A DNA stretch of 63,341 nucleotides, the filler included, from Sminthopsis crassicaudata (lineage: Eukaryota): assembly GCF_048593235.1 (NCBI RefSeq). It is 3 parts of 3 records of this genome, joined end to end, with 100 filler letters (N's around TTAATTAATTAA, not from the genome) between each part and the next. Parts side by side here need not be neighbours in the genome. Positions count along the whole stretch, not along the records: positions 1 to 20,191 come from NC_133620.1; 2 more parts are not named here. One strand, written 5' to 3'. The translations under genes were made by a program, and so were the position numbers. Under the pieces are notes generated by a model. That model was given only the letters and a program-made list of their open reading frames with translations. It did not search any database and was not told where the DNA came from. Of the stretch, positions 1 to 12,100 are shown one piece after another; positions within the stretch are counted from its first letter, which is position 1; each line of letters starts with the position of its first letter.

Positions 1-110
1 GGCCCTGAATTCAGGAGGACCCGAGTTCAAATTTGGTCTCTAGACACTTAACACTTCCTAGCTGTGTGACCCTGGGCAAGTCACTTAACCCTAGCCTCAG
101 GGAAAAAAAA
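1..110 (+). mobile_element. tRNA-derived marsupial SINE (WSINE1-like), cut at its 5' end by the window edge
   Basis: B-box GAGTTCAAAT, core CTGTGTGACCCTGGGCAAGTCACTTAACC and an A-rich tail. The same family recurs at 4312, 9705, 45043 and 61812. Confidence 0.8.
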
Positions 111-973
111 TGAATATATACAGAAATTTAAATTTAATTAAAATTATATGGAGAAATTTAGAAATTAAAAACAAAACAAAAACCATTTGCCACTTAGAAG
201 CAAGGTAAACTTGTTCCCTGCTCTCGATCTATTTCCTCATCTGTAAAGTGAAGTGATTGGAAAAAAGAGTTTTCGGGCTTCTTCCAGCTCTTTCAACTCT
301 TCCTGAATTCTTGGGCTGTGGAAATATTTGCCTTTTTGTCTTCATGCTCTCTCCCTGAGTCCCTTCCAGGCCAATTTACACTTTTCTCCCTGATTGCTTT
401 TTGTGAGATTGAGGAAAACTGCATAAACTTGGAGTTTACCTCTTTTGAAGAATATAGGACTAGGTTAAAAAGCAAAATACACAACTAATTCAGCCCTGCT
501 AATAGACTCCAAGGCTTAAACACCCTTCTTTATTCCTTTAGTTAATAATTATTAAGTGCCTGGCTATTCTGGTTACAGTGACTCTCTAGGTTATGTTTGC
601 TAAAACTTGTACATAATGATAGGGTCTCCCACTAGAACAAGGAAGTGCAGACTAAAAACAAATCCAGCTAATTCAGTTTAGTTAAAATTCATTTATATGG
701 ACTGAGCTGACTGAAAATTTGTGGTCATTCAACCAGACCTGGAATGAAGCTCACCTTTGTTCTTTCATGGAGAAAGGACTTGTTTAGCAAATTCATGGTA
801 CAAACACTATTCCAAGAGGTATATTTAACCTGTTTAATAAAACCAAAAAGATTTTTCAGGACATTGTTAGTATGCAAATAATGCTATTTCAAATGAGCTA
901 TTTATTTGGGCTTTCTTCCATTTGGCAGCTTTTTGTTAGCCATTAGTTCCAGTTACTGTTTGCACTTGAAACT

Positions 974-2299: not shown

Positions 2300-2440
2300 C
2301 TCATTTTACACATGAGGGAACTGAGGCAAACGGGGTTAGGTGACTGGCCCAGATCACACAGCTAGTGAGTGAAGGCTGCTCTTGAAAATGAGTCTTCCTG
2401 AGTCCAAGCCCAATGAGTGCTCTAACCACTGTGCAGCCTG
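2300..2440 (+). mobile_element. MIR SINE
   Basis: MIR core CATTTTACACATGAGGGAACTGAGGC...GTGACTGGCCCAGATCACACAGCTAGT. Confidence 0.6.
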
Positions 2441-4311: not shown

Positions 4312-4440
4312 GGGGCAGCGAGGTGGTGCAGTGGATAGAGCACCAGCCCTGAAGTCAGGAGGACCTAACACTTCCCAGCTGTGTGACCCTGGGCAAGTCA
4401 CTTAACCCCATTGCCCTAGCCCCCCAAAAATTTTAAAAAA
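4312..4440 (+). mobile_element. WSINE1-like SINE with an internal deletion of the B-box
   Basis: GGGGCAGCGAGGTGGTGCAGTGGATAGAGCACC...GGACCT joined directly to AACACTTCCC; the GAGTTCAAATC...GACACTT segment seen in sibling copies is absent. Confidence 0.75.
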
Positions 4441-5849
4441 GAAAAATAAGAATTGTTTATTGTAAGGGACAAGAGTGTGCCACCATGTAGGTAGGAGCTC
4501 ACATTCTGCAGGGTGAGGAGAAAGTACATTCTATATATGTCAATACAAGAAAATCCTGATATGGGGAAGAATACCAACACTGGAGAGACTGGCCTTACAC
4601 AGGAAGTAGCTTCTGAGTTGAGCCTTCAAAGGAAGACAAGGATCCCGAGAGGCAGAGTTGAGGAGATACTGTATTTGTAGCCCAGGAATGGCTTGTGCAA
4701 ATAAATGGAAATAGAGATAAAAGCTGAATGGAAATTTAGAAAACAGCTAATAGTTCAGTCTGGCTTGAATAAAGAGTAAGTGAAGGAGATAAAATAAGCA
4801 TAAATAGAACAAAATAAGATTAGAAAGATGAGGATTGGAGTCAAACTGCAGAGAACTTTAAATGCTGAGCTAAGGCATTTCTCTTTTATCCCACAGGCAG
4901 AGGCAATTCAGTGAGATTTTTAAGCAAGAGAATATATCAATCAGCCAACAAGCATCTATTGGTCAGATCTGGGCTTTAAATATACTTCAGTTTGGCAGTT
5001 GTGGAAGAGATGAATTGGAGAGGGAAAAGATTTGAAGGGAAACCAAGTAGGAGGCTGATGCAATAATCTAGGGATAGAATCGGGCCCAATTGGGGTGATG
5101 ACTACTTTAGTTGAGAAAGGGAATCAATCAACAACAGAAATTTCTGATATCTGATTTATTTAATATTTTCCCTCAGTTATATCTAAAACAAATTTTTGTT
5201 TACATTTGTCTTAAATTTTTGAGTTCTACACTTCCTAGCTGTGTGACCCTAGGCAAGTCACTTCACCCCAATTGCCTGGGGGGGGGGAAATAATTTTTTT
5301 GTATGTGTGAATTCTAGGTTCTTTCCCTTCTTTTCACTTGTAATCAAGAGACCAAATGTGAAGTTATGCAAAACATTTCCATAAAAGTCAACAACAGGCA
5401 TTTCTTAAATGTCTACTATGTATAAGTTTCTATACTAAGGAAAAGCAAAATAGATCTGTCCTCCAGGAGGTTATAATTTAATCAAAAGAATCCAGGGTGA
5501 TTCTGAAGTTACAAAATTGGTTGATTAGAAAAATTAGAGAAATAAGATTTGGAATTTAAAATAATGAGCTGTTTCCAGCGTGTAGCACACAGAGAGACCA
5601 GGATAGAAATATCTCTATCATCTCTTCCTTCCCACTCCTTCACTTCTACAAAGGAGACTTTAGTTCTTATCAGGAGGAGAAGCCAGAGGTGGAAGGTAGA
5701 GGTTAACTATTCTTCTCTCCTTAGAGAAGAGATTATTGAATTAAAATTATGTCTCTCTGCCTCCTGTATTATTAGTCATGGGGATGTAAATTTCAGATTA
5801 AAGCTAAACTCCTGATTATTTCTTAATGGGAAAGGAAGGCAGCAAGCTT

Positions 5850-5907
<58 letters not shown>
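5850..5907. repeat. (TA)n microsatellite
   Basis: Direct reading. Confidence 0.95.
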
Positions 5908-5910
<3 letters not shown>

Positions 5911-6660
5911 TCTCAATAGTATTTTATTTTTTTCCAAATATATATATATAGTTTTCAACATTCATTTTTGTAAGATTTTTTGTTCTAATTTTTTTCTTTT
6001 TCCCTTCCTTCCCTCCCCTCTCCCCAAGATAGCAAGTAATCTGAAATGTTATACATGTACAATACTTTTAAACATTTTCATTTTTGTCACGTTGTGCAAG
6101 AAAAAAGCAGCCTAAAAGAGGGGGGGGGAACCATGAGAAAGAAAAAGCAAATAACCAAAAAAAAGATGAAAATACTATTATTATTTGATCCACATTTGGT
6201 CTCCATAATTTTCTCTCTGGATGAAGATGGCATTTTCCATGCCAAATCTATTGGAACTTCTTGGATCACTGTATTTCTGAGAAGAGCTAAGTCTATCATA
6301 GTTGACCATCACATAATCTTGTCACTATGTACAATGTTTTCTTGGTTCTGCTCACTTCATTCAGCATTAGTTCATGTAAGTCTTTCAAGGCTTTTCTGAA
6401 ATCAGCCCGCTAATCATTTCTTATAAAAGAGTAATATTCCATTATATTCATGTACCATAACTTATTTCAGCCATTCCCTAAACGACAGGCATTTAATTTA
6501 CAATTCTTTGCCACCACAAAAAGAGATGCTATAAACATTCACATGTAGATTCTTTTTCCTCTTTTCTGATCTTTTGGGGATACAGACCCAAAGTGACACT
6601 GCTGAATCAAAGAGTATGCACAGTTTTATAACCCTTTTGTTCTAAATTGTTTTCCAGAAA
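5908..6660 (-). mobile_element. older L1 3' fragment (ORF2 C-terminus and 3' UTR)
   Basis: The reverse complement is a degenerate version of the ORF2 end seen at 7290-7680 (GAATGGCTGAAATAAGTTATGGTACATGAAT...GAAGTGAGCAGAACCAAG). Confidence 0.75.
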
Positions 6661-8150
6661 ATTAGTATGGCAGAAACTAGGCATGGACCCACATTTAACA
6701 CCACATACTAAGATAAGATCAAAATGGGTCCAAGATTTAGGCATAAAGAATGAAATCATAAATAAATTGGAGGAACATGGGATAGTCTACTTCTCAGACT
6801 TGTGGAGGAGGAAGGAGTTTGTGTCCAAGGGAGAACTAGAGACCATTATTGATCACAAAATAGAACATTTTGATTACACCAAATTAAAAAGTTTCTGCAC
6901 AAACAAAACTAATGCAAACAAGATTAGAAGAGAAGTAACAAATTGGGAAAACATTTTTACAGTTAAAGGTTCTGATAAAGGCCTCATCTCCAAAATATAC
7001 AGAGAATTGACTTTAATTTATAAGAAATCAAGCCATTCTCCAATTGATAAATGGTCAAAGGATATGAACAGACAATTTTCAGATGATGAAATTGAAACTA
7101 TTTCCACTCATATGAAAGAGTGTTCCAAATCACTATTGATCAGAGAAATGCAAATTAAGACAACTCTGAGATATCATTACACACCTGTCAGATTGGTTAA
7201 GATGACAGGAACAAATAATGATGAATGTTGGAGGGGCTGTGGGAAAACTGGGACACCGATGCATTGTTGGTGGAGTTGTGAAAGAATCCAACCATTCTGG
7301 AGAGCAATCTGGAATTATGCCCAAAAAGTTATCAAAATGTGCATACCCTTTGACGCAGCCATACTACTACTGGGCTTATATCCCAAGGAAATACTAAAGA
7401 AGGAAAAGGGACCTGTTTGTGCCAAAATGTTTGTGGCAGCTCTTTTTGTAGTGGCTAGAAACTGGAAAATGAATGGATGTCCATCAATTGGAGAATGGTT
7501 GGGTAAATTATGGTATATGAATGTTATGGAATATTATTGTTCTGTAAGAAACGACCAACAGGAGGAATACAGAGAGGTTTGGAGAGACTTACATCAACTG
7601 ATGCTAAGTGAAACGAGCAGAACTAGGGGATCATTATACACTTCAACAATGATACTGTATGAGGATGTATGCTGATGGAAGTGGATATCTTCAACATAGA
7701 GAAGAGCTAATCCAATTCCAATTGATCAATGATGGACAGAATCAGCTACACCCAGAAAAGGAACACTGGGAAATGAGTGTAAACTGTGAGCATTTTTTGT
7801 TTTTCTCCTTTATTTTTGGTTCTGCCAATCCCCTGAAATCCTTTCATGAGGTCTGTGAAGTCAAAACTATTTTTATAATACTGAGGCATTTCAGTTATTT
7901 TTACCTTCCTAATCCAATTCTTCCTTTGCAACAACAACAACAACAAAATTCTGTTCTGGACATATATATTGTATCTAGGTTATACTATAACATATTTAAT
8001 ATGTATGGGAAAGCCTGCCATCTAGGGGTGGGGGTAGAGGAAAGGAGGGGAAAAATTCAGAACAGAAGGGAGTACAAGGGATAATGTTATAAAAAATTAC
8101 CTATGCATATGTACTGTCAAAAAAGTTATAATTATAAAATTAATAAAAAA
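6661..8150 (+). mobile_element. young 5'-truncated L1: uninterrupted ORF2 C-terminus, 3' UTR and A tail
   Basis: ORF 6647-7675 has L1 ORF2 motifs HSPIDKWSKDMNRQFS, CWRGCGKTGT.MHCWW.C and WYMNVMEYY, with a stop at 7675, a 3' UTR and AATAAAAAA at 8142-8150. Confidence 0.95.
7816..7893 (-). repeat. 78-nt exact inverted copy of 8762-8839 inserted in the L1 3' UTR
   Basis: Base-by-base reverse-complement identity over 78 nt; TTATTTTT direct repeats at 7810-7817 and 7895-7902. Confidence 0.95.
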
Positions 8151-8344
8151 GAAATTTCTTCATCTAAAAATTGTTCAAATCCTCTGACCACTTGAAATTT
8201 AAGATCTTAACAAATTAAAATGATGATTCAATTCTACAAGTTTATATTTAATAGGAATAAATGTAAAGTCCCACACAAGTTCAGTCAACTGCACACGTAT
8301 AGAATGGGAAGAAGTCATGATCAAAATAACAATTTACATTCATG

Positions 8345-8600
8345 AGGCAGTTAGGTGGGACAGTGGCTAGAGCCTTAGGCTTGAAGTTAGAAAGAAGAGA
8401 GTTCAAAATCAGCCATAGGCACTCACCAGTTCTGTGATTTCAGCAGCAAATCACTTAACTGCTGTTGTCTCAGTTTCCTCATCTGTAAAATGGGAACAAT
8501 AATACCTACCTTCTAAGTTTGTGTTGAGGATCAAGTGAGGCAATATTTATGAAGCACTTTGTAAACCTCTACATAAAATATAAATGCTACTTATTAATGT
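8345..8600 (+). mobile_element. MIR SINE
   Basis: GAGGCAGTTAGGTGGGACAGTGG...CTCAGTTTCCTCATCTGTAAAATGGG MIR core. Confidence 0.65.
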
Positions 8601-8654
8601 TTTTAAAAAATTATATTCTGAACTTAAATGCCAAAAAATAGGTGTTTACATATA

Positions 8655-8828
8655 CATCAATTTTCAAACTTTTTAATCTCAGGATCCCCTTTACATGCTT
8701 ATAAAGCTTAGAACCCCTGTTTATGTGGGTTACATATATCAATATTTATTATGTTAGAAATTGAAATGCCTCAGTATTATAAAAATAGTTTTGACTTCAC
8801 AGACCTCATGAAAGGATTTCAGGGGATT
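8655..8828 (+). mobile_element. old non-autonomous DNA-transposon (hAT/MER-like) remnant; source of the 78-nt copy
   Basis: TTTCAAACTTTTTAATCTCAGGATCCCCTTTAC...TTTATGTGGGTTAC...ATAGTTTTGAC resembles mammalian hAT-Charlie MITEs from memory; family not confirmed. Confidence 0.4.
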
Positions 8829-11800
8829 GGCAGAACCAAGATAGTGGCCATCCAACTGAATTCTCTCAACATTCCCCAGAGTTCCAGGGGCAGAGAGGGA
8901 CACTGGTGGTTGGTCACAAAGGAGGAGATGCCTAGACACAGTTCCAAAGCAGAAGAGAGTGCTAGAACTTTGGGATGCAGTGGATCAGAGGTCCTTCCTG
9001 GGTAAAGACCAGAACACAGATCGGAAGAGCAATGACCATATTTCTAGAATCACATCACCTTAGAAGCACCAAAAACTTGCAGACTCTCAGAATTGAAGCT
9101 TGGCACAATATCTCCCCACTCCCAGGTAACAGAACCCCAAAACTTCGAGTCAAGAGATAGTCTGGAAAAATGAGCAAACAATAATATCAAAAAAATTAAT
9201 TAAAAAATAACTAAAATAGTAGGGAAGATGGATACATAAACTCAGAAAAAATAGAACAATGTGAAAACAGCTTCCAAAACCCCTCAAAAGTGCTAATTGG
9301 ACCCAAGCTCAACAAGAATTCATGAGTTAAATAAATAAATTAGAATAGTGGAAGAAAATTTAGAAAATTATGAAAAGAAAATTAATAGTTTGATAAAGGA
9401 GACACCAAAAATATTGAAGAAACAATACCTTTAAAAACAGAATTGGACAAAAGGTGCTTACAAAAATTTACTGAAGAAAAGAACTCCTTAAAAAAAAGCA
9501 AAACTGGTCAAATAGGAAAAAAGATACAAAAAAAAAAGATACTGAAGAAAATAGTTCTTTAAAAATTAATTTGGGTAAGATAGAGCTACTGACTCCATGA
9601 GACATCAAAAAAAAATAACATTAAGTCAAAAGAATGAAAAAATTGAAGAAATTGTGAAATATTTAATTGGAAAAACAGTTGACCTAGAAAATAGATCTAG
9701 TAGAGGTAGCTTAGGAGTAGAGTATCAGTCCTGAAGTCAGGAAGACCTGAGTTCAAATCTGGCCTTAGACACAACATTATCTAGAGACGTGACCCTGGGC
9801 AAGTCACTTAATTCCAATTGCCTCAGCTTAAAAAAATTATTGGTGAAAGTTATGCTCAAAGAAAAGGTCTAGACATCATATGTCAAGAAATTATCAAGGA
9901 AAACTGCCCCGATATCTTAGAAGTAGAGAGTGAAATATAAATTGAAAGAATCCACCAATCACGTCCTAAAAGAGATTCCAGAATGAAAACTTCCAGAAAT
10001 ATTATAGCAAATTCTAGAGCTCTCAAGTAAAAAAGAAAATATTTCAAGTAGCCAGATAGAAACAATTCAAATAACATGGCATCATAGTCAGGATCAAAGA
10101 AGAGATTCAGCAGTTTCCACATTCAAGAAAAGGGCTTGGAATAGTATTCCAGAAAGCAAAGGAAGCAGGATTACAAACAAGAATAATCTACCTAGCAAAA
10201 CTGAGTGTAATCATTTCAAAGGGAAATTAATATTTAATGAAATAGAAGACTATCAAGTATTCCTGATGAAAAGATCAGAGCTGAATAGAAAATTTGACAT
10301 TCAAACACAAAACTCAGGAAGAGCATGAAAAGATAAACATGAAAGAGTAATCGTAAGGGACTCAATAAAATTAAACTGTCTATATTCCTATGTAGGAAGA
10401 TGATACATGTATTTTCCTAAGAACTTTATCATTATTAAGGCAGTTAGAAGGAGTCTATATAAACAGAGGGCAATGGGGATATATCAATTATGTTGAGATG
10501 ATTTTTTTAAAAAGTGAAAGAGTGAGCAAGATGGAAGGTGACAAGGGGGAAAAGAGGCTGAATAGGGAAATTTTTCTTATATTAAAAAAGTGTGCAAGGA
10601 AAAATATTTATAGTGAAGGGGGAAATGAAAGGATGTGCAATGCTTGAACCTTACTGGAATTGGTTCAAAGAGGGAAGAACATACACACCCACACATGCAT
10701 ACATGTATATACACATGGGAGTAAGTGGAAAGATGATAAAAGGCAGAGTGGATTAAGGAAGCAATAGTCAGACATACACACAAAAATTAGTCAGACATAG
10801 GATAAAAAAAGAAAGAAGAAAAAATAGAAGAAAATGGAATGGAGAAAATACAGTTTTCATTACTTTAACTATGAGTGAGATGAGCTTACTCATAAAACAG
10901 AAGCAGATAGCAATAACTTTTAGAAGTTAGAATACAATATTATGTTGTTTCCAAGATGCAATTGAAACAGAAAACACACACACACAGTTAAAGGAATGGA
11001 GCAGAATCTAATGTGTTTTAGCTGAAGAAAAATAAGACAGGAATAGCAATCATGATCTCAGACAAAGCAAAAGTAAAAATAGATTTAACTGAAAGAGATA
11101 ATTAGGGAAACTACATTTTGCTAAAAGGTACCACAGATGATGATGTAATATAAAAATATTACAAGAAGTTTCTCATAGAGAACTGAGTCAAAGTTGTAAA
11201 AATAAGAGCCATTGCCCAATTGATAAAGGGTCAAAGAATATGAATGGGCAGTTTTCAGAAGAAGAAATCAAAATTATCTATTCTCATATAAAAATTCTCT
11301 GTATTACTATTGATTAAAGAAGTGCAAATTAAAACCTCACATCTATGAGAAATGAGAAATGCTGGAGGGGATGGGGAAAACAGGTATACTAATGCATTAT
11401 TAATTTAATTGTGAACTGTTCCAATTATTCTGGAGAACAATTTGGACAATGCCCAAAGGATGATAAAATTGTATATACCCTTTGGCTGAACAGTACCACT
11501 ACTATATCCCATAGAGATCAAAAGGAAAGGAAAATGATCTAGGTATATAAAAATATCACAGCAGCTCTTTCTGTGGTGGCAAAGAATTACAAATTAAAGG
11601 GATGACTATTGATTGAGGAATAGCTGAACAAATTATAGCATATGATTGTGATGAAGGGGGGGTAGTTTCAGAAAAAACATGGCAAGAAATATATGAACTA
11701 ATGCCAAGTAAAATGAGAAAAACCAGGACATCATTGTGTATAGTAACAGCAATGCAGTAATGATGATCAGCTGTGAAAGACTTGGCAATTCTGATCAATA

Positions 11801-12100
11801 AGATGATTCCAAGAGACTTATGACGTAAAAATGCTATTCACCTCCAGAGAGAGAGAAGTTTATACTTGGAGTGCAAACTGAAGTATAATTTTCTCATTTA
11901 AATTTTTTTGTCTTTTTTTTAATATTGTTAATATGGAAATCGTTTTCTGTGATTTCACTTGTATAATTAATATTATATTGCTTGCCTTCTCAGTGAATGA
12001 GAGTGTGGGTAGGAGGGAAGGAAAGGATTTTGAAATCAAAATTTAAAAAGGTTAGTAAATAAGTAATCATTTAATATGTGATATATTTAATATAAAATAA
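8829..12100 (+). mobile_element. degenerate near-full-length L1 with a large internal ORF2 deletion
   Basis: Decayed L1 start (CCAAGATAGTGG, resembling CCAAGATGGCGG) and ORF1 remnants (IERIHQSRPKRDSRMKTSRNIIA, about 9940-10010). An endonuclease remnant (GIAIMISDKAKVKIDL, about 11040-11130) jumps directly to the ORF2 C-terminus at about 11200; 3' UTR to about 12100. Confidence 0.7.
9705..9835 (+). mobile_element. WSINE1-like SINE nested in the L1
   Basis: GAGTTCAAATCTGGCCTTAGACAC...GTGACCCTGGGCAAGTCACTTAA plus an A tail. Confidence 0.7.

What the first reader, a model, noticed from the sequence alone, without database searches (positions are those of the whole stretch)
7810..8839. 78-nt exact inverted templated insertion with an 8-bp duplication inside a young L1 3' UTR
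Seen: 7816-7893 is the exact reverse complement of 8762-8839, about 870 nt downstream. The insert is flanked by TTATTTTT at 7810-7817 and 7895-7902, the second copy is followed by A (TTTTT/A), and the left junction shares TT/AA microhomology with the donor end. Established: TTTT/A is the L1 endonuclease nick motif, and target-site duplications with microhomology priming mark L1-mediated or break-repair templated insertions. Inference: local DNA or RNA was copied into the break, by trans reverse transcription without a poly(A) tail or by fold-back template switching. Perfect identity to an otherwise old, decayed donor implies a very recent event. The donor end coincides with the apparent start of the neighbouring old L1. 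The pair could also form a long-range RNA duplex.
Basis: partly seen in the sequence, partly recalled or inferred. Interest (0 to 1): 0.7.

Follow-up and report, generated by a model that had tools for sequence, protein, structure and literature searches.

The report
Inverted local patch inside an L1 tail
A 77-base stretch in the tail of a young marsupial L1 is a perfect back-to-front copy of DNA 868 bases downstream, flanked by a duplicated 8-base motif; this is most likely an ordinary template-switch mutation, and I could not check it against raw reads.

Summary
7816-7893 is the exact reverse complement of 8762-8839 (self-BLAST E 7.6e-35). TTATTTTT stands at 7810-7817 and 7895-7902, followed by A. 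An octamer match at such an offset has an empirical chance of about 1e-4 per site.

The patch lies in the 3' UTR of a 5'-truncated L1 whose ORF2 tail is still open for 342 codons. Its closest relatives are Tasmanian devil L1 proteins.

The downstream copy is probably the original. It sits inside an old repeat whose second, about 59% identical copy (5357-5532, minus strand) aligns across the 8762 boundary. Two older L1s in the window also lack 60-85 nt at the patch site.

Best reading: a polymerase left the T-run, copied 76-79 nt of nearby DNA in inverted orientation using 2-nt microhomology, and returned 6-8 nt behind its point of departure.

Which polymerase did this, and when, stays open. 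It could be a replication or repair polymerase after the L1 arrived, or L1 reverse transcriptase during that L1's own integration.

Trans-retrotransposition of an RNA is unlikely, because there is no poly(A) and the donor lies in cis.

Perfect identity bounds the age only to under about 9-19 Myr.

This is a new example of a known kind of event, of modest interest.

The parts
7818..7894 (+). Inserted patch of 77 nt. 7818-7893 (76 nt) is unambiguously templated by the opposite strand of 8762-8837. 7894 (g) does not match the donor. The TT at 7816-7817 could belong to either the patch or the L1.
   Evidence: Exact identity checked by script; the repeat finder I1; BLAST E 7.6e-35.
7810..7817 (+). 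Left copy of the duplicated octamer TTATTTTT. Its last two T overlap the donor end (AA at 8838-8839), giving 2-nt microhomology.
   Evidence: chance about 1.25e-4 per site.
7895..7902 (+). Right copy of the octamer TTATTTTT, followed by A (TTTTT/A). Its first two T also pair with 8759-8760, so the duplication is 6-8 bp depending on how the ambiguous bases are assigned.
8762..8839 (+). Donor (template) of the patch. It is the last 78 nt or so of an old interspersed repeat.
   Evidence: A second diverged copy of the same repeat aligns across 8762 and on to about 8842. No duplication flanks this copy.
8644..8843 (+). Old repeat that holds the donor. From memory it resembles a MER5-type hAT miniature element; this was not tested.
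   Evidence: Local alignment to the reverse complement of 5357-5532 scores 24, against 12.4 +/- 2.7 for 336 random window segments, none of which reached it. Inverted termini were not demonstrable.
5357..5532 (-). Second, about 59% identical copy of the old repeat. It is used as the outgroup for the direction of copying.
6647..8163 (+). L1-A, a young 5'-truncated L1. The ORF2 C-terminal part is open from 6647 to 7675, and the 3' UTR with its A-rich tail runs to about 8150-8163. Its ends are approximate.
   Evidence: Sarcophilus L1 proteins are 78-83% identical and Vombatus 66%. tblastn places homologues at 6659-7666 in one frame. The only stop is the terminal one.
8840..12900 (+). L1-B, an old L1 with a 5' UTR-like part, an ORF1 ATG at 9171 and many stops. 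A SINE is inserted at 9718-9837. The start at 8840 and the end are approximate.
5885..6668 (-). L1-C, an old L1 3' fragment on the minus strand that abuts L1-A. Its 3' UTR served for the length comparison.

Best explanation
This is a DNA-templated template-switch insertion made in cis after L1-A was in place, during replication or break repair.

A growing plus-sense 3' end stopped at the T-run (TTATTTTT, 7810-7817). It left its template and annealed by two bases (TT on AA at 8838-8839) to the plus strand about 1 kb ahead. It copied 76-79 nt leftwards, down to 8762 or 8759. It then returned to its proper template 6-8 nt behind the point where it had left, so the octamer was copied twice.

The mirror-image order gives the same product: a snap-back of the minus-strand 3' end that primes at the TT of 8759-8760.

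Shown: the anatomy, the significance of the repeat and of the duplication, and the direction of copying. Inferred: the polymerase, the initiating lesion (a stalled fork, or a staggered nick that may even have been made by L1 endonuclease at TTTTT/A) and the timing. The only demonstrable consequence is a perfect 78-bp inverted repeat with an 868-nt spacer. It would fold into a long duplex if transcribed.
For: - The inverted copy is exact and has a nearby template.
- The left junction has 2-nt microhomology. The right junction has 2 nt after one mismatch. This 'microhomeology' pattern is described for microhomology-mediated templated insertions, which also occur as germline variants (PMC8421209).
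- Short-range template switches create perfect nearby inverted repeats, and T10 was the most significant and most frequent enriched motif in the 10-20 nt motif search around the first switch point (PMC7954356).
- The donor is in its native context. A second old copy of its repeat aligns through 8762.
- Between two conserved anchor blocks, L1-A has 204 nt, against 144 in L1-C and 135 in L1-B. Without the patch and one octamer it has 119 nt. MAFFT opens a 57-nt gap in both older elements opposite 7846-7902.
- A donor in cis at 868 nt is what a local DNA mechanism predicts. An RNA-mediated mechanism has no reason to produce it.
Against: - Known short-range switches use templates within tens to hundreds of nucleotides (PMC7954356; within 100 bp in yeast, PMC8421209). 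Here the distance is 868 nt and the patch is rather long.
- The clean 8-bp duplication ending in TTTTT/A is also the signature of L1 endonuclease.
- No read support, no empty allele and no same-family L1 copy could be examined.
- The evidence for direction rests on weak alignments of about 59% identity.
Confidence: 0.45

Rival explanations
1. The patch was made during L1-A's own integration. While L1 reverse transcriptase was copying the L1-A RNA, about 260 nt in from the 3' end, the cDNA end left the RNA at the U-run. It folded back onto the minus-strand target DNA to which it was attached. The donor lies 600-675 nt from the L1-A 3' junction, on exactly that primer strand. The enzyme copied about 78 nt of DNA, then returned to the same RNA 6-8 nt back and went on to 6650.
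For: - The strand logic fits. The cDNA strand of a plus-oriented L1 is joined to the minus strand to its right, and the patch requires that minus strand as its template (sequence logic).
- L1-A is itself young, with 342 open codons, so its age range overlaps that of the 78/78 identity.
- This reading explains why the patch lies inside an L1 and next to its insertion site.
Against: - It needs the primer strand to be single-stranded over 600 nt or more, and it needs two switches, out of and back into the same RNA.
- Described L1 chimeras sit at the 5' junction, not inside a colinear L1 (10.1101/2025.02.02.635956).
- L1s are common in this window, where I annotated three, so a patch inside one needs no special explanation.
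- The ends and target-site duplication of L1-A could not be fixed.
Confidence: 0.18
2. L1 endonuclease nicked the plus strand at TTATTTTT/A. A plus-sense RNA covering 8762-8839 annealed by its terminal AA to the T-run and was reverse transcribed in trans. This gave a tailless retro-insertion with an 8-bp target-site duplication.
For: - A duplication of at least 5 bp and the TTTT/A site are two marks of class 1 templated sequence insertions (PMC5110952).
- The AA/TT overlap lies on the side where the RNA 3' end would pair with the primer.
- TSDs of 7-15 bp are reported for small-RNA/L1 chimeras.
Against: - There is no poly(A) tract and no polyadenylation signal, both of which are marks of class 1.
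- An RNA-mediated event has no reason to land 868 nt from its source, and class 1 donors are distant.
- No RNA with a 3' end at 8839 is known.
- The extra base is C in RNA sense, not the G expected from copying a cap (own knowledge).
- In the experimental human system, full-length and 5'-inverted insertions showed discrete TSDs of 12-18 bp, longer than the 8 bp here.
Confidence: 0.08
3. This is an assembly or gap-filling artefact. The mate of a read pair, which by construction is the reverse complement of sequence one insert length downstream, was pasted between two contig ends that really overlap by the octamer.
For: - The window holds a 134-N run (13270-13403). If it is an assembly gap rather than masking, its odd size would suggest an estimated-size gap of a scaffolded assembly.
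- The unambiguous templated part, 7818-7893, is 76 nt, which is a classical short-read length. The only mismatch is the base right after it, as with a poor last cycle.
- The best runs hold only 0.87 of the sampled words of 7600-9000.
Against: - Graph and overlap assemblers join on long shared words, not on 2 nt.
- The junctions look biological: microhomology plus a short duplication at a T-run.
- Runs of two independent samples and studies of the same organism hold 0.74-0.87 of the words. The junction words are too few, about 4%, for this to decide anything.
Confidence: 0.15
4. The direction is reversed, or the feature belongs to the family. The 78-mer would be native to this L1 subfamily's 3' UTR, and 8762-8839 would be the copy, for example filler at the 5' junction of L1-B.
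For: The donor ends where L1-B seems to begin. No same-family L1 copy was available to exclude this.
Against: - 8762-8839 is continuous with an old repeat family on its left, across 8762.
- L1-B is old, with 7 stops in 161 codons and a SINE inside, so filler at its junction could not still be identical.
- The octamer duplication flanks the L1-A copy and not the other one.
- The older L1 UTRs are shorter at that site.
Confidence: 0.05
5. This is aberrant local transposition by a hAT transposase. The patch is the terminal 78 nt or so of what looks like a hAT-type miniature element. It was moved a short distance and has the 8-bp target duplication typical of hAT elements.
For: - The duplication is 8 bp.
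- The donor ends within 1-4 nt of the old repeat's tip.
- From my own knowledge, untested here: hAT elements hop locally, and a hAT family was active in the dasyurid lineage.
Against: - The donor is still in place.
- The patch has no second terminus, and terminal inverted repeats of the old repeat are not detectable above shuffles.
- A 59%-decayed element should not be recognised by a transposase.
- The octamer does not fit the usual nTnnnnAn target (own knowledge).
Confidence: 0.02

Closest known systems
Short-range template-switch mutations and microhomology-mediated templated insertions (four-point model, PMC7954356; MMB-TI, PMC8421209)
   Same: An inverted copy of nearby sequence is inserted. 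This produces a perfect inverted repeat, with 2-nt microhomology at one junction and microhomology interrupted by one mismatch at the other. The polymerase returns to the original template, and the switch occurs in a T-run context. Such events are known as germline variants.
   Different: The template is 868 nt away rather than tens to hundreds of nucleotides. The patch is long, at 76-79 nt. The return point lies 6-8 nt behind the departure point, which gives a clean flanking duplication.
Class 1 templated sequence insertions and other L1 ORF2p-mediated trans insertions (PMC5110952)
   Same: There is a flanking duplication of at least 5 bp, the target ends in TTTT/A, and the inserted sequence is not L1.
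   Different: There is no poly(A) tract and no polyadenylation signal. The donor is in cis rather than distant. The duplication is shorter than the 12-18 bp seen at full-length and 5'-inverted insertions in the experimental human system (PMC11702581).
Rearranged L1 insertions: twin priming, template-switching RT and self-annealing at ORF2p-made ends (PMC11702581; 10.1101/2025.02.02.635956)
   Same: An inverted segment is associated with an L1, and flanking DNA is used as the template. ORF2p is known to switch templates.
   Different: Known cases sit at the 5' junction or join L1 to another RNA. Here a patch of flanking genomic DNA lies inside an otherwise colinear 3' UTR.
Polymerase theta snap-back templated insertions at double-strand breaks (own knowledge; yeast foldback insertions of mostly about 5-34 bp, PMC11724301 abstract)
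   Same: Inverted templated synthesis is primed by 1-3 nt, and the first added base can be wrong.
   Different: Those inserts are much shorter, their templates lie next to the break, and they usually come with deletions rather than duplications.

Membership tests
Template-switch / microhomology-mediated templated insertion | The insert is a copy, often inverted, of a template on the same molecule nearby | tested here: met
   78/78 identity in inverted orientation, with 868 nt between the arms.
Template-switch / microhomology-mediated templated insertion | Microhomology or microhomeology at both switch junctions | tested here: met
   Left junction: TT/AA, 2 nt. Right junction: TT after one mismatched g. 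This matches the microhomeology described in PMC8421209.
Template-switch / microhomology-mediated templated insertion | The template lies within tens to hundreds of nucleotides of the switch point | tested here: not met
   The distance is 868-1020 nt, against 'tens to hundreds of nucleotides' (PMC7954356) and within 100 bp in yeast. This feature is a habit of the surveyed events and of the detection methods, not a strict definition.
Template-switch / microhomology-mediated templated insertion | The ancestral allele lacks the insert | not testable with these tools
The only indirect evidence is the length budget against two older L1 UTRs.
L1 ORF2p-mediated (TPRT, class 1) insertion | Target-site duplication of at least 5 bp | tested here: met
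   The TTATTTTT octamer occurs twice, with a chance of about 1.25e-4 per site.
L1 ORF2p-mediated (TPRT, class 1) insertion | Insertion at a 5'-TTTT/A-3' endonuclease site | tested here: met
   The plus strand reads TTATTTTT/A at 7902/7903. The surrounding UTR is 31% T and 36% A, so this is weak evidence.
L1 ORF2p-mediated (TPRT, class 1) insertion | Poly(A) tract with an upstream polyadenylation signal in the insert | tested here: not met
   The insert abuts the T-run with only AA. No A or T tract lies beyond the octamer.
L1 ORF2p-mediated (TPRT, class 1) insertion | RNA intermediate: a donor that is transcribed, and usually distant | not testable with these tools
   No RNA data were obtained. 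The donor is in cis at 868 nt, which argues against this route.
L1 twin-priming 5' inversion | The inverted segment is L1 sequence lying 5' of the direct segment | tested here: not met
   The inverted piece is flanking genomic repeat DNA, and L1-A is colinear on both sides of it.
hAT transposon insertion | 8-bp target-site duplication | tested here: met
hAT transposon insertion | Terminal inverted repeats at both ends of the inserted unit | tested here: not met
   The test for inverted termini scored 24, against a shuffle mean of 23.8. The 77-nt unit has only one natural terminus.

The most novel reading that the evidence does not exclude
The patch may be a fossil of L1 reverse transcriptase using target DNA as a template in the middle of an integration. 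During target-primed reverse transcription of L1-A, the cDNA end would have folded back onto its own primer strand 600-675 nt away. It would have copied 78 nt of genomic DNA and then resumed on the L1 RNA a few bases back. That would be a natural record of an internal RNA-to-DNA-to-RNA template excursion by ORF2p. It would also show that the target strand was single-stranded over about 1 kb, as at a replication fork.
Probability: 0.17. Interest if true: 0.55.

Novelty: new member of a known kind. Interest (0 to 1): 0.27.

Why it matters
If real, this is a clean, datable example of a long-range (about 0.9 kb) inverted templated insertion in a marsupial germline. It creates a perfect 78-bp inverted repeat in one step. 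Such repeats can stall forks, and if transcribed they form double-stranded RNA (-147.5 kcal/mol).

Its mixed signature is the main lesson. It combines template-switch junctions with an L1-like 8-bp duplication at TTTTT/A. Surveys that class insertions by the target duplication and endonuclease motif alone could therefore mislabel repair events as L1-mediated.

A single locus without read support does not change what is known about either mechanism.

Tried and rejected
**Read evidence**
Those places were handled only in local scripts. All database queries used the flanks (7770-7791 and 7904-7924) or other regions.

**Attempts to fetch other copies of this L1 family**
2. A protein search found only relatives at or below 83% identity, all from UniRef, with no DNA attached.
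4. Exact scans with flank 21-22-mers found nothing in metagenome contigs or genome contigs.

**Models considered and rejected**
6. Inversion by staggered breaks, which leaves inverted duplications at both ends of an inverted segment. Rejected because the L1-A 3' UTR is colinear with older L1 UTRs on both sides of the patch.
7. Twin priming. Rejected because the inverted piece is not L1. L1-C next to L1-A is a different, 69% identical element, not an inverted part of L1-A.
8. A frameshifted ORF2 running through the patch (the 141-aa ORF at 7659-8084). Rejected because homologues end at 7660-7666, and Pfam finds nothing in the ORF.

**Tests that gave nothing significant**
9. Terminal inverted repeats of the donor's old repeat.
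10. The target-site duplication of L1-A.
11. A 14/15 match of the right junction (7888-7902) to the reverse complement of 9203-9217. It could hint at a second template, but it is at chance level.


Full report
**Observation**

- 7816-7893 is the exact reverse complement of 8762-8839. The repeat finder reports 81-nt arms at 99% with 862 nt between them, and the self-BLAST E-value is 7.6e-35.
- The match stops at 7815/8840 and at 7894/8761. The next two bases pair again: 7895-7896 (TT) with 8759-8760.
- TTATTTTT stands at 7810-7817 and 7895-7902, after CTCCT and before A.
- In this window an octamer recurring at an offset of 60-140 nt occurs at 1.25e-4 per site. At offset 85 the only hit outside a (TA)n tract is 7810.

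The inverted repeat and the flanking duplication are therefore both real features of the assembled sequence.

**Context**

The ORF at 6647-7675 (342 aa) is the C-terminal part of an L1 ORF2.
- Its best relatives are Sarcophilus harrisii proteins at 78-83% identity and a Vombatus protein at 66%. The genome is therefore marsupial and probably dasyurid-like.
- Homologues align in one frame from 6659 and end at 7660-7666. The stop at 7675 is therefore the true end of ORF2, and the patch lies in the 3' UTR of this 5'-truncated element, which I call L1-A.
- The 141-aa ORF at 7659-8084 that reads through the patch has no family match and is a chance ORF.

L1-A is young: its only stop in 343 codons is the terminal one. 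The downstream element L1-B starts at about 8840 and has its ORF1 ATG at 9171. It has 19 stops in 376 codons and 7 in 161, and a SINE is inserted at 9718-9837. A third old fragment, L1-C, lies on the minus strand at 5885-6668.

**Which copy is the original**

Three lines of evidence point to 8762-8839 as the original.
1. 8644-8801 aligns with the reverse complement of 5357-5532. The score is 24, against 12.4 +/- 2.7 for 336 random window segments, none of which reached it, and 1 of 300 shuffles reached it. The alignment runs straight through the 8762 boundary. It can be followed weakly to about 8842. The downstream arm is thus part of an old repeat family, about 59% identical between its two copies, and is in its native context.
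2. The octamer duplication flanks the upstream arm only.
3. In a MAFFT alignment of the three L1 3' UTRs, both older elements receive a 57-nt gap opposite 7846-7902. Between two conserved anchor blocks L1-A has 204 nt, L1-C 144 and L1-B 135. Without the patch and one octamer L1-A has 119 nt.

These UTR alignments are weak, at 55-63% identity. They fix neither the breakpoints nor the empty-site sequence. From memory the old repeat resembles a MER5-type hAT miniature element. I could not test that, and its terminal inverted repeats are not detectable above shuffles.

**Junction anatomy**

Read on the plus strand, the order is as follows.
- CTCCT.
- The octamer, whose last TT can also be read as the complement of the donor's terminal AA.
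- 76 nt that can only come from the donor.
- One g that the donor does not template.
- The octamer again, whose first TT also matches the donor.
- ACCTTCC.

The duplication is therefore 6-8 bp and the templated tract 76-81 nt, depending on how the ambiguous bases are assigned. The donor end at 8839 lies within 1-4 nt of the tip of the old repeat and of the apparent start of L1-B. I regard this coincidence as unexplained. Run-off at a strand end, such as the 5' end of an Okazaki fragment, would explain it without reference to the repeats.

**Age**

Seventy-eight identical bases without any CpG give a median age of about 2 Myr and a 95% upper bound of about 9 Myr at 2.2e-9 per site per year. At 1e-9 the upper bound is about 19 Myr. 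If the g at 7894 is a later substitution in an 81-nt copy, the estimate is similar. This is recent compared with the donor repeat and L1-B. It is not necessarily 'very recent', and it cannot be separated from the age of L1-A itself.

**Mechanism**

The product requires a polymerase to leave one template, copy the opposite strand about 0.9 kb away, and come back a few bases behind its departure point.

*Favoured reading (0.45): an ordinary DNA-level template switch in cis, after L1-A was in place.*
- The junctions match those of microhomology-mediated templated insertions. Those events have microhomology mostly of 2-12 bp, often extended by allowing one mismatch, and they occur as germline variants (PMC8421209).
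- Short-range template switches are known to create perfect nearby inverted repeats, and T10 was the top enriched motif in the 10-20 nt motif search around the first switch point (PMC7954356).
- The cis position of the donor is exactly what a local DNA mechanism predicts.
- Against this reading, the distance and the length exceed the usual range, and the tidy duplication ending in TTTTT/A is also what L1 endonuclease leaves. The initiating nick could indeed have been made by L1 endonuclease and then repaired with local DNA as the template.

*Second reading (0.18): the excursion happened during L1-A's own target-primed reverse transcription.*
- The cDNA of a plus-oriented L1 is attached to the minus strand on its right. 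The patch needs precisely that strand as its template, 600-675 nt from the L1-A 3' junction.
- Experimental L1 insertions show templated insertions, self-annealing of ends and template-switching reverse transcription (PMC11702581).
- Described chimeras sit at the 5' junction rather than inside a colinear element, and this model needs a long single-stranded target.

It fails on the poly(A) tract and the polyadenylation signal (PMC5110952). It also has no explanation for a donor in cis.

*hAT-type event (0.02).* Only the 8-bp duplication suggests it.

**Artefact (0.15)**

They were used only in local scripts.
- Flank scans of metagenome and prokaryote genome collections found nothing.

Three things keep an artefact alive.
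- The 134-N run at 13270-13403, if it is an assembly gap rather than masking, suggests a scaffolded assembly with size-estimated gaps.
- The unambiguous templated part is 76 nt, a classical read length, with the mismatch right after it.
- The donor lies roughly one large paired-end insert downstream in reverse orientation, which is what an unplaced mate would look like.

Against an artefact, assemblers join on long overlaps, not on 2 nt. Runs of organism A from two independent samples and studies hold 0.74-0.87 of the sampled words of 7600-9000. The junction words are too small a share for this figure to decide anything.

**Consequences**

If both arms are in one transcript they pair. The duplex energy is -147.5 kcal/mol, and 76 of 78 arm pairs are kept in the minimum-energy fold of 7760-8890. 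Nothing here shows that the region is transcribed. The nearest recognisable gene is exon 1 of a type III intermediate-filament gene, 8 kb downstream at 16623-17423.

**Verdict**

This is a new example of a known kind of mutation, a locally templated inverted insertion. Its mixed junction signature is instructive, but it is not yet validated by reads. Interest 0.27.

Noticed in passing
window 16623-17423 (+): This open frame of 266 aa carries the Pfam Filament_head and Filament domains (E 5.7e-07 and 1.8e-24). Its best solved relative is vimentin (E 8.9e-37). It is exon 1 of a type III intermediate-filament gene, about 8 kb downstream of the finding.
   Followed up: partly
window 13921-14043 and 14416-14536: Two adjacent inverted-repeat pairs (60 nt at 85% and 56 nt at 75%) enclose about 370-500 nt. 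This may be a TIR-bearing element or a palindromic rearrangement of about 616 bp.
   Followed up: no
window 13270-13403: A run of 134 N. If it is an assembly gap and not masking, its odd length suggests an estimated-size gap of a scaffolded assembly. That bears on how much to trust small structural features nearby. It was not filled or looked up.
   Followed up: no
window 7888-7902 vs 9203-9217: The right junction of the patch, including the untemplated g, matches the reverse complement of a 15-mer in L1-B at 14 of 15 positions (pair I7). This is probably chance in A/T-rich sequence, but a second template switch would look like this.
   Followed up: partly
window 6640-6653 vs 8162-8179: By eye these are candidate target-site duplication halves of L1-A (TCTAAATTGTT against TCTAAAAATTGTT). 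They are not significant in a shuffle test, so the exact ends of L1-A remain open.
   Followed up: partly
window 4-111, 2302-2432 (-), 4363-4415, 5223-5277, 8340-8600, 9718-9837: Several copies of MIR/marsupial-type SINEs share the ...GACCCTGGGCAAGTCACTTAA... core. One is inserted inside L1-B, which supports its old age.
   Followed up: no
window 5843-5922: A long (TA)n microsatellite sits at the 3' end of the minus-strand L1-C fragment.
   Followed up: no
window 6328-6659 vs 7295-7640: L1-C (minus strand) and L1-A (plus strand) abut head to head and overlap in ORF2 coordinates at 69% identity. The arrangement looks like a twin-priming inversion but is two different elements.
   Followed up: yes
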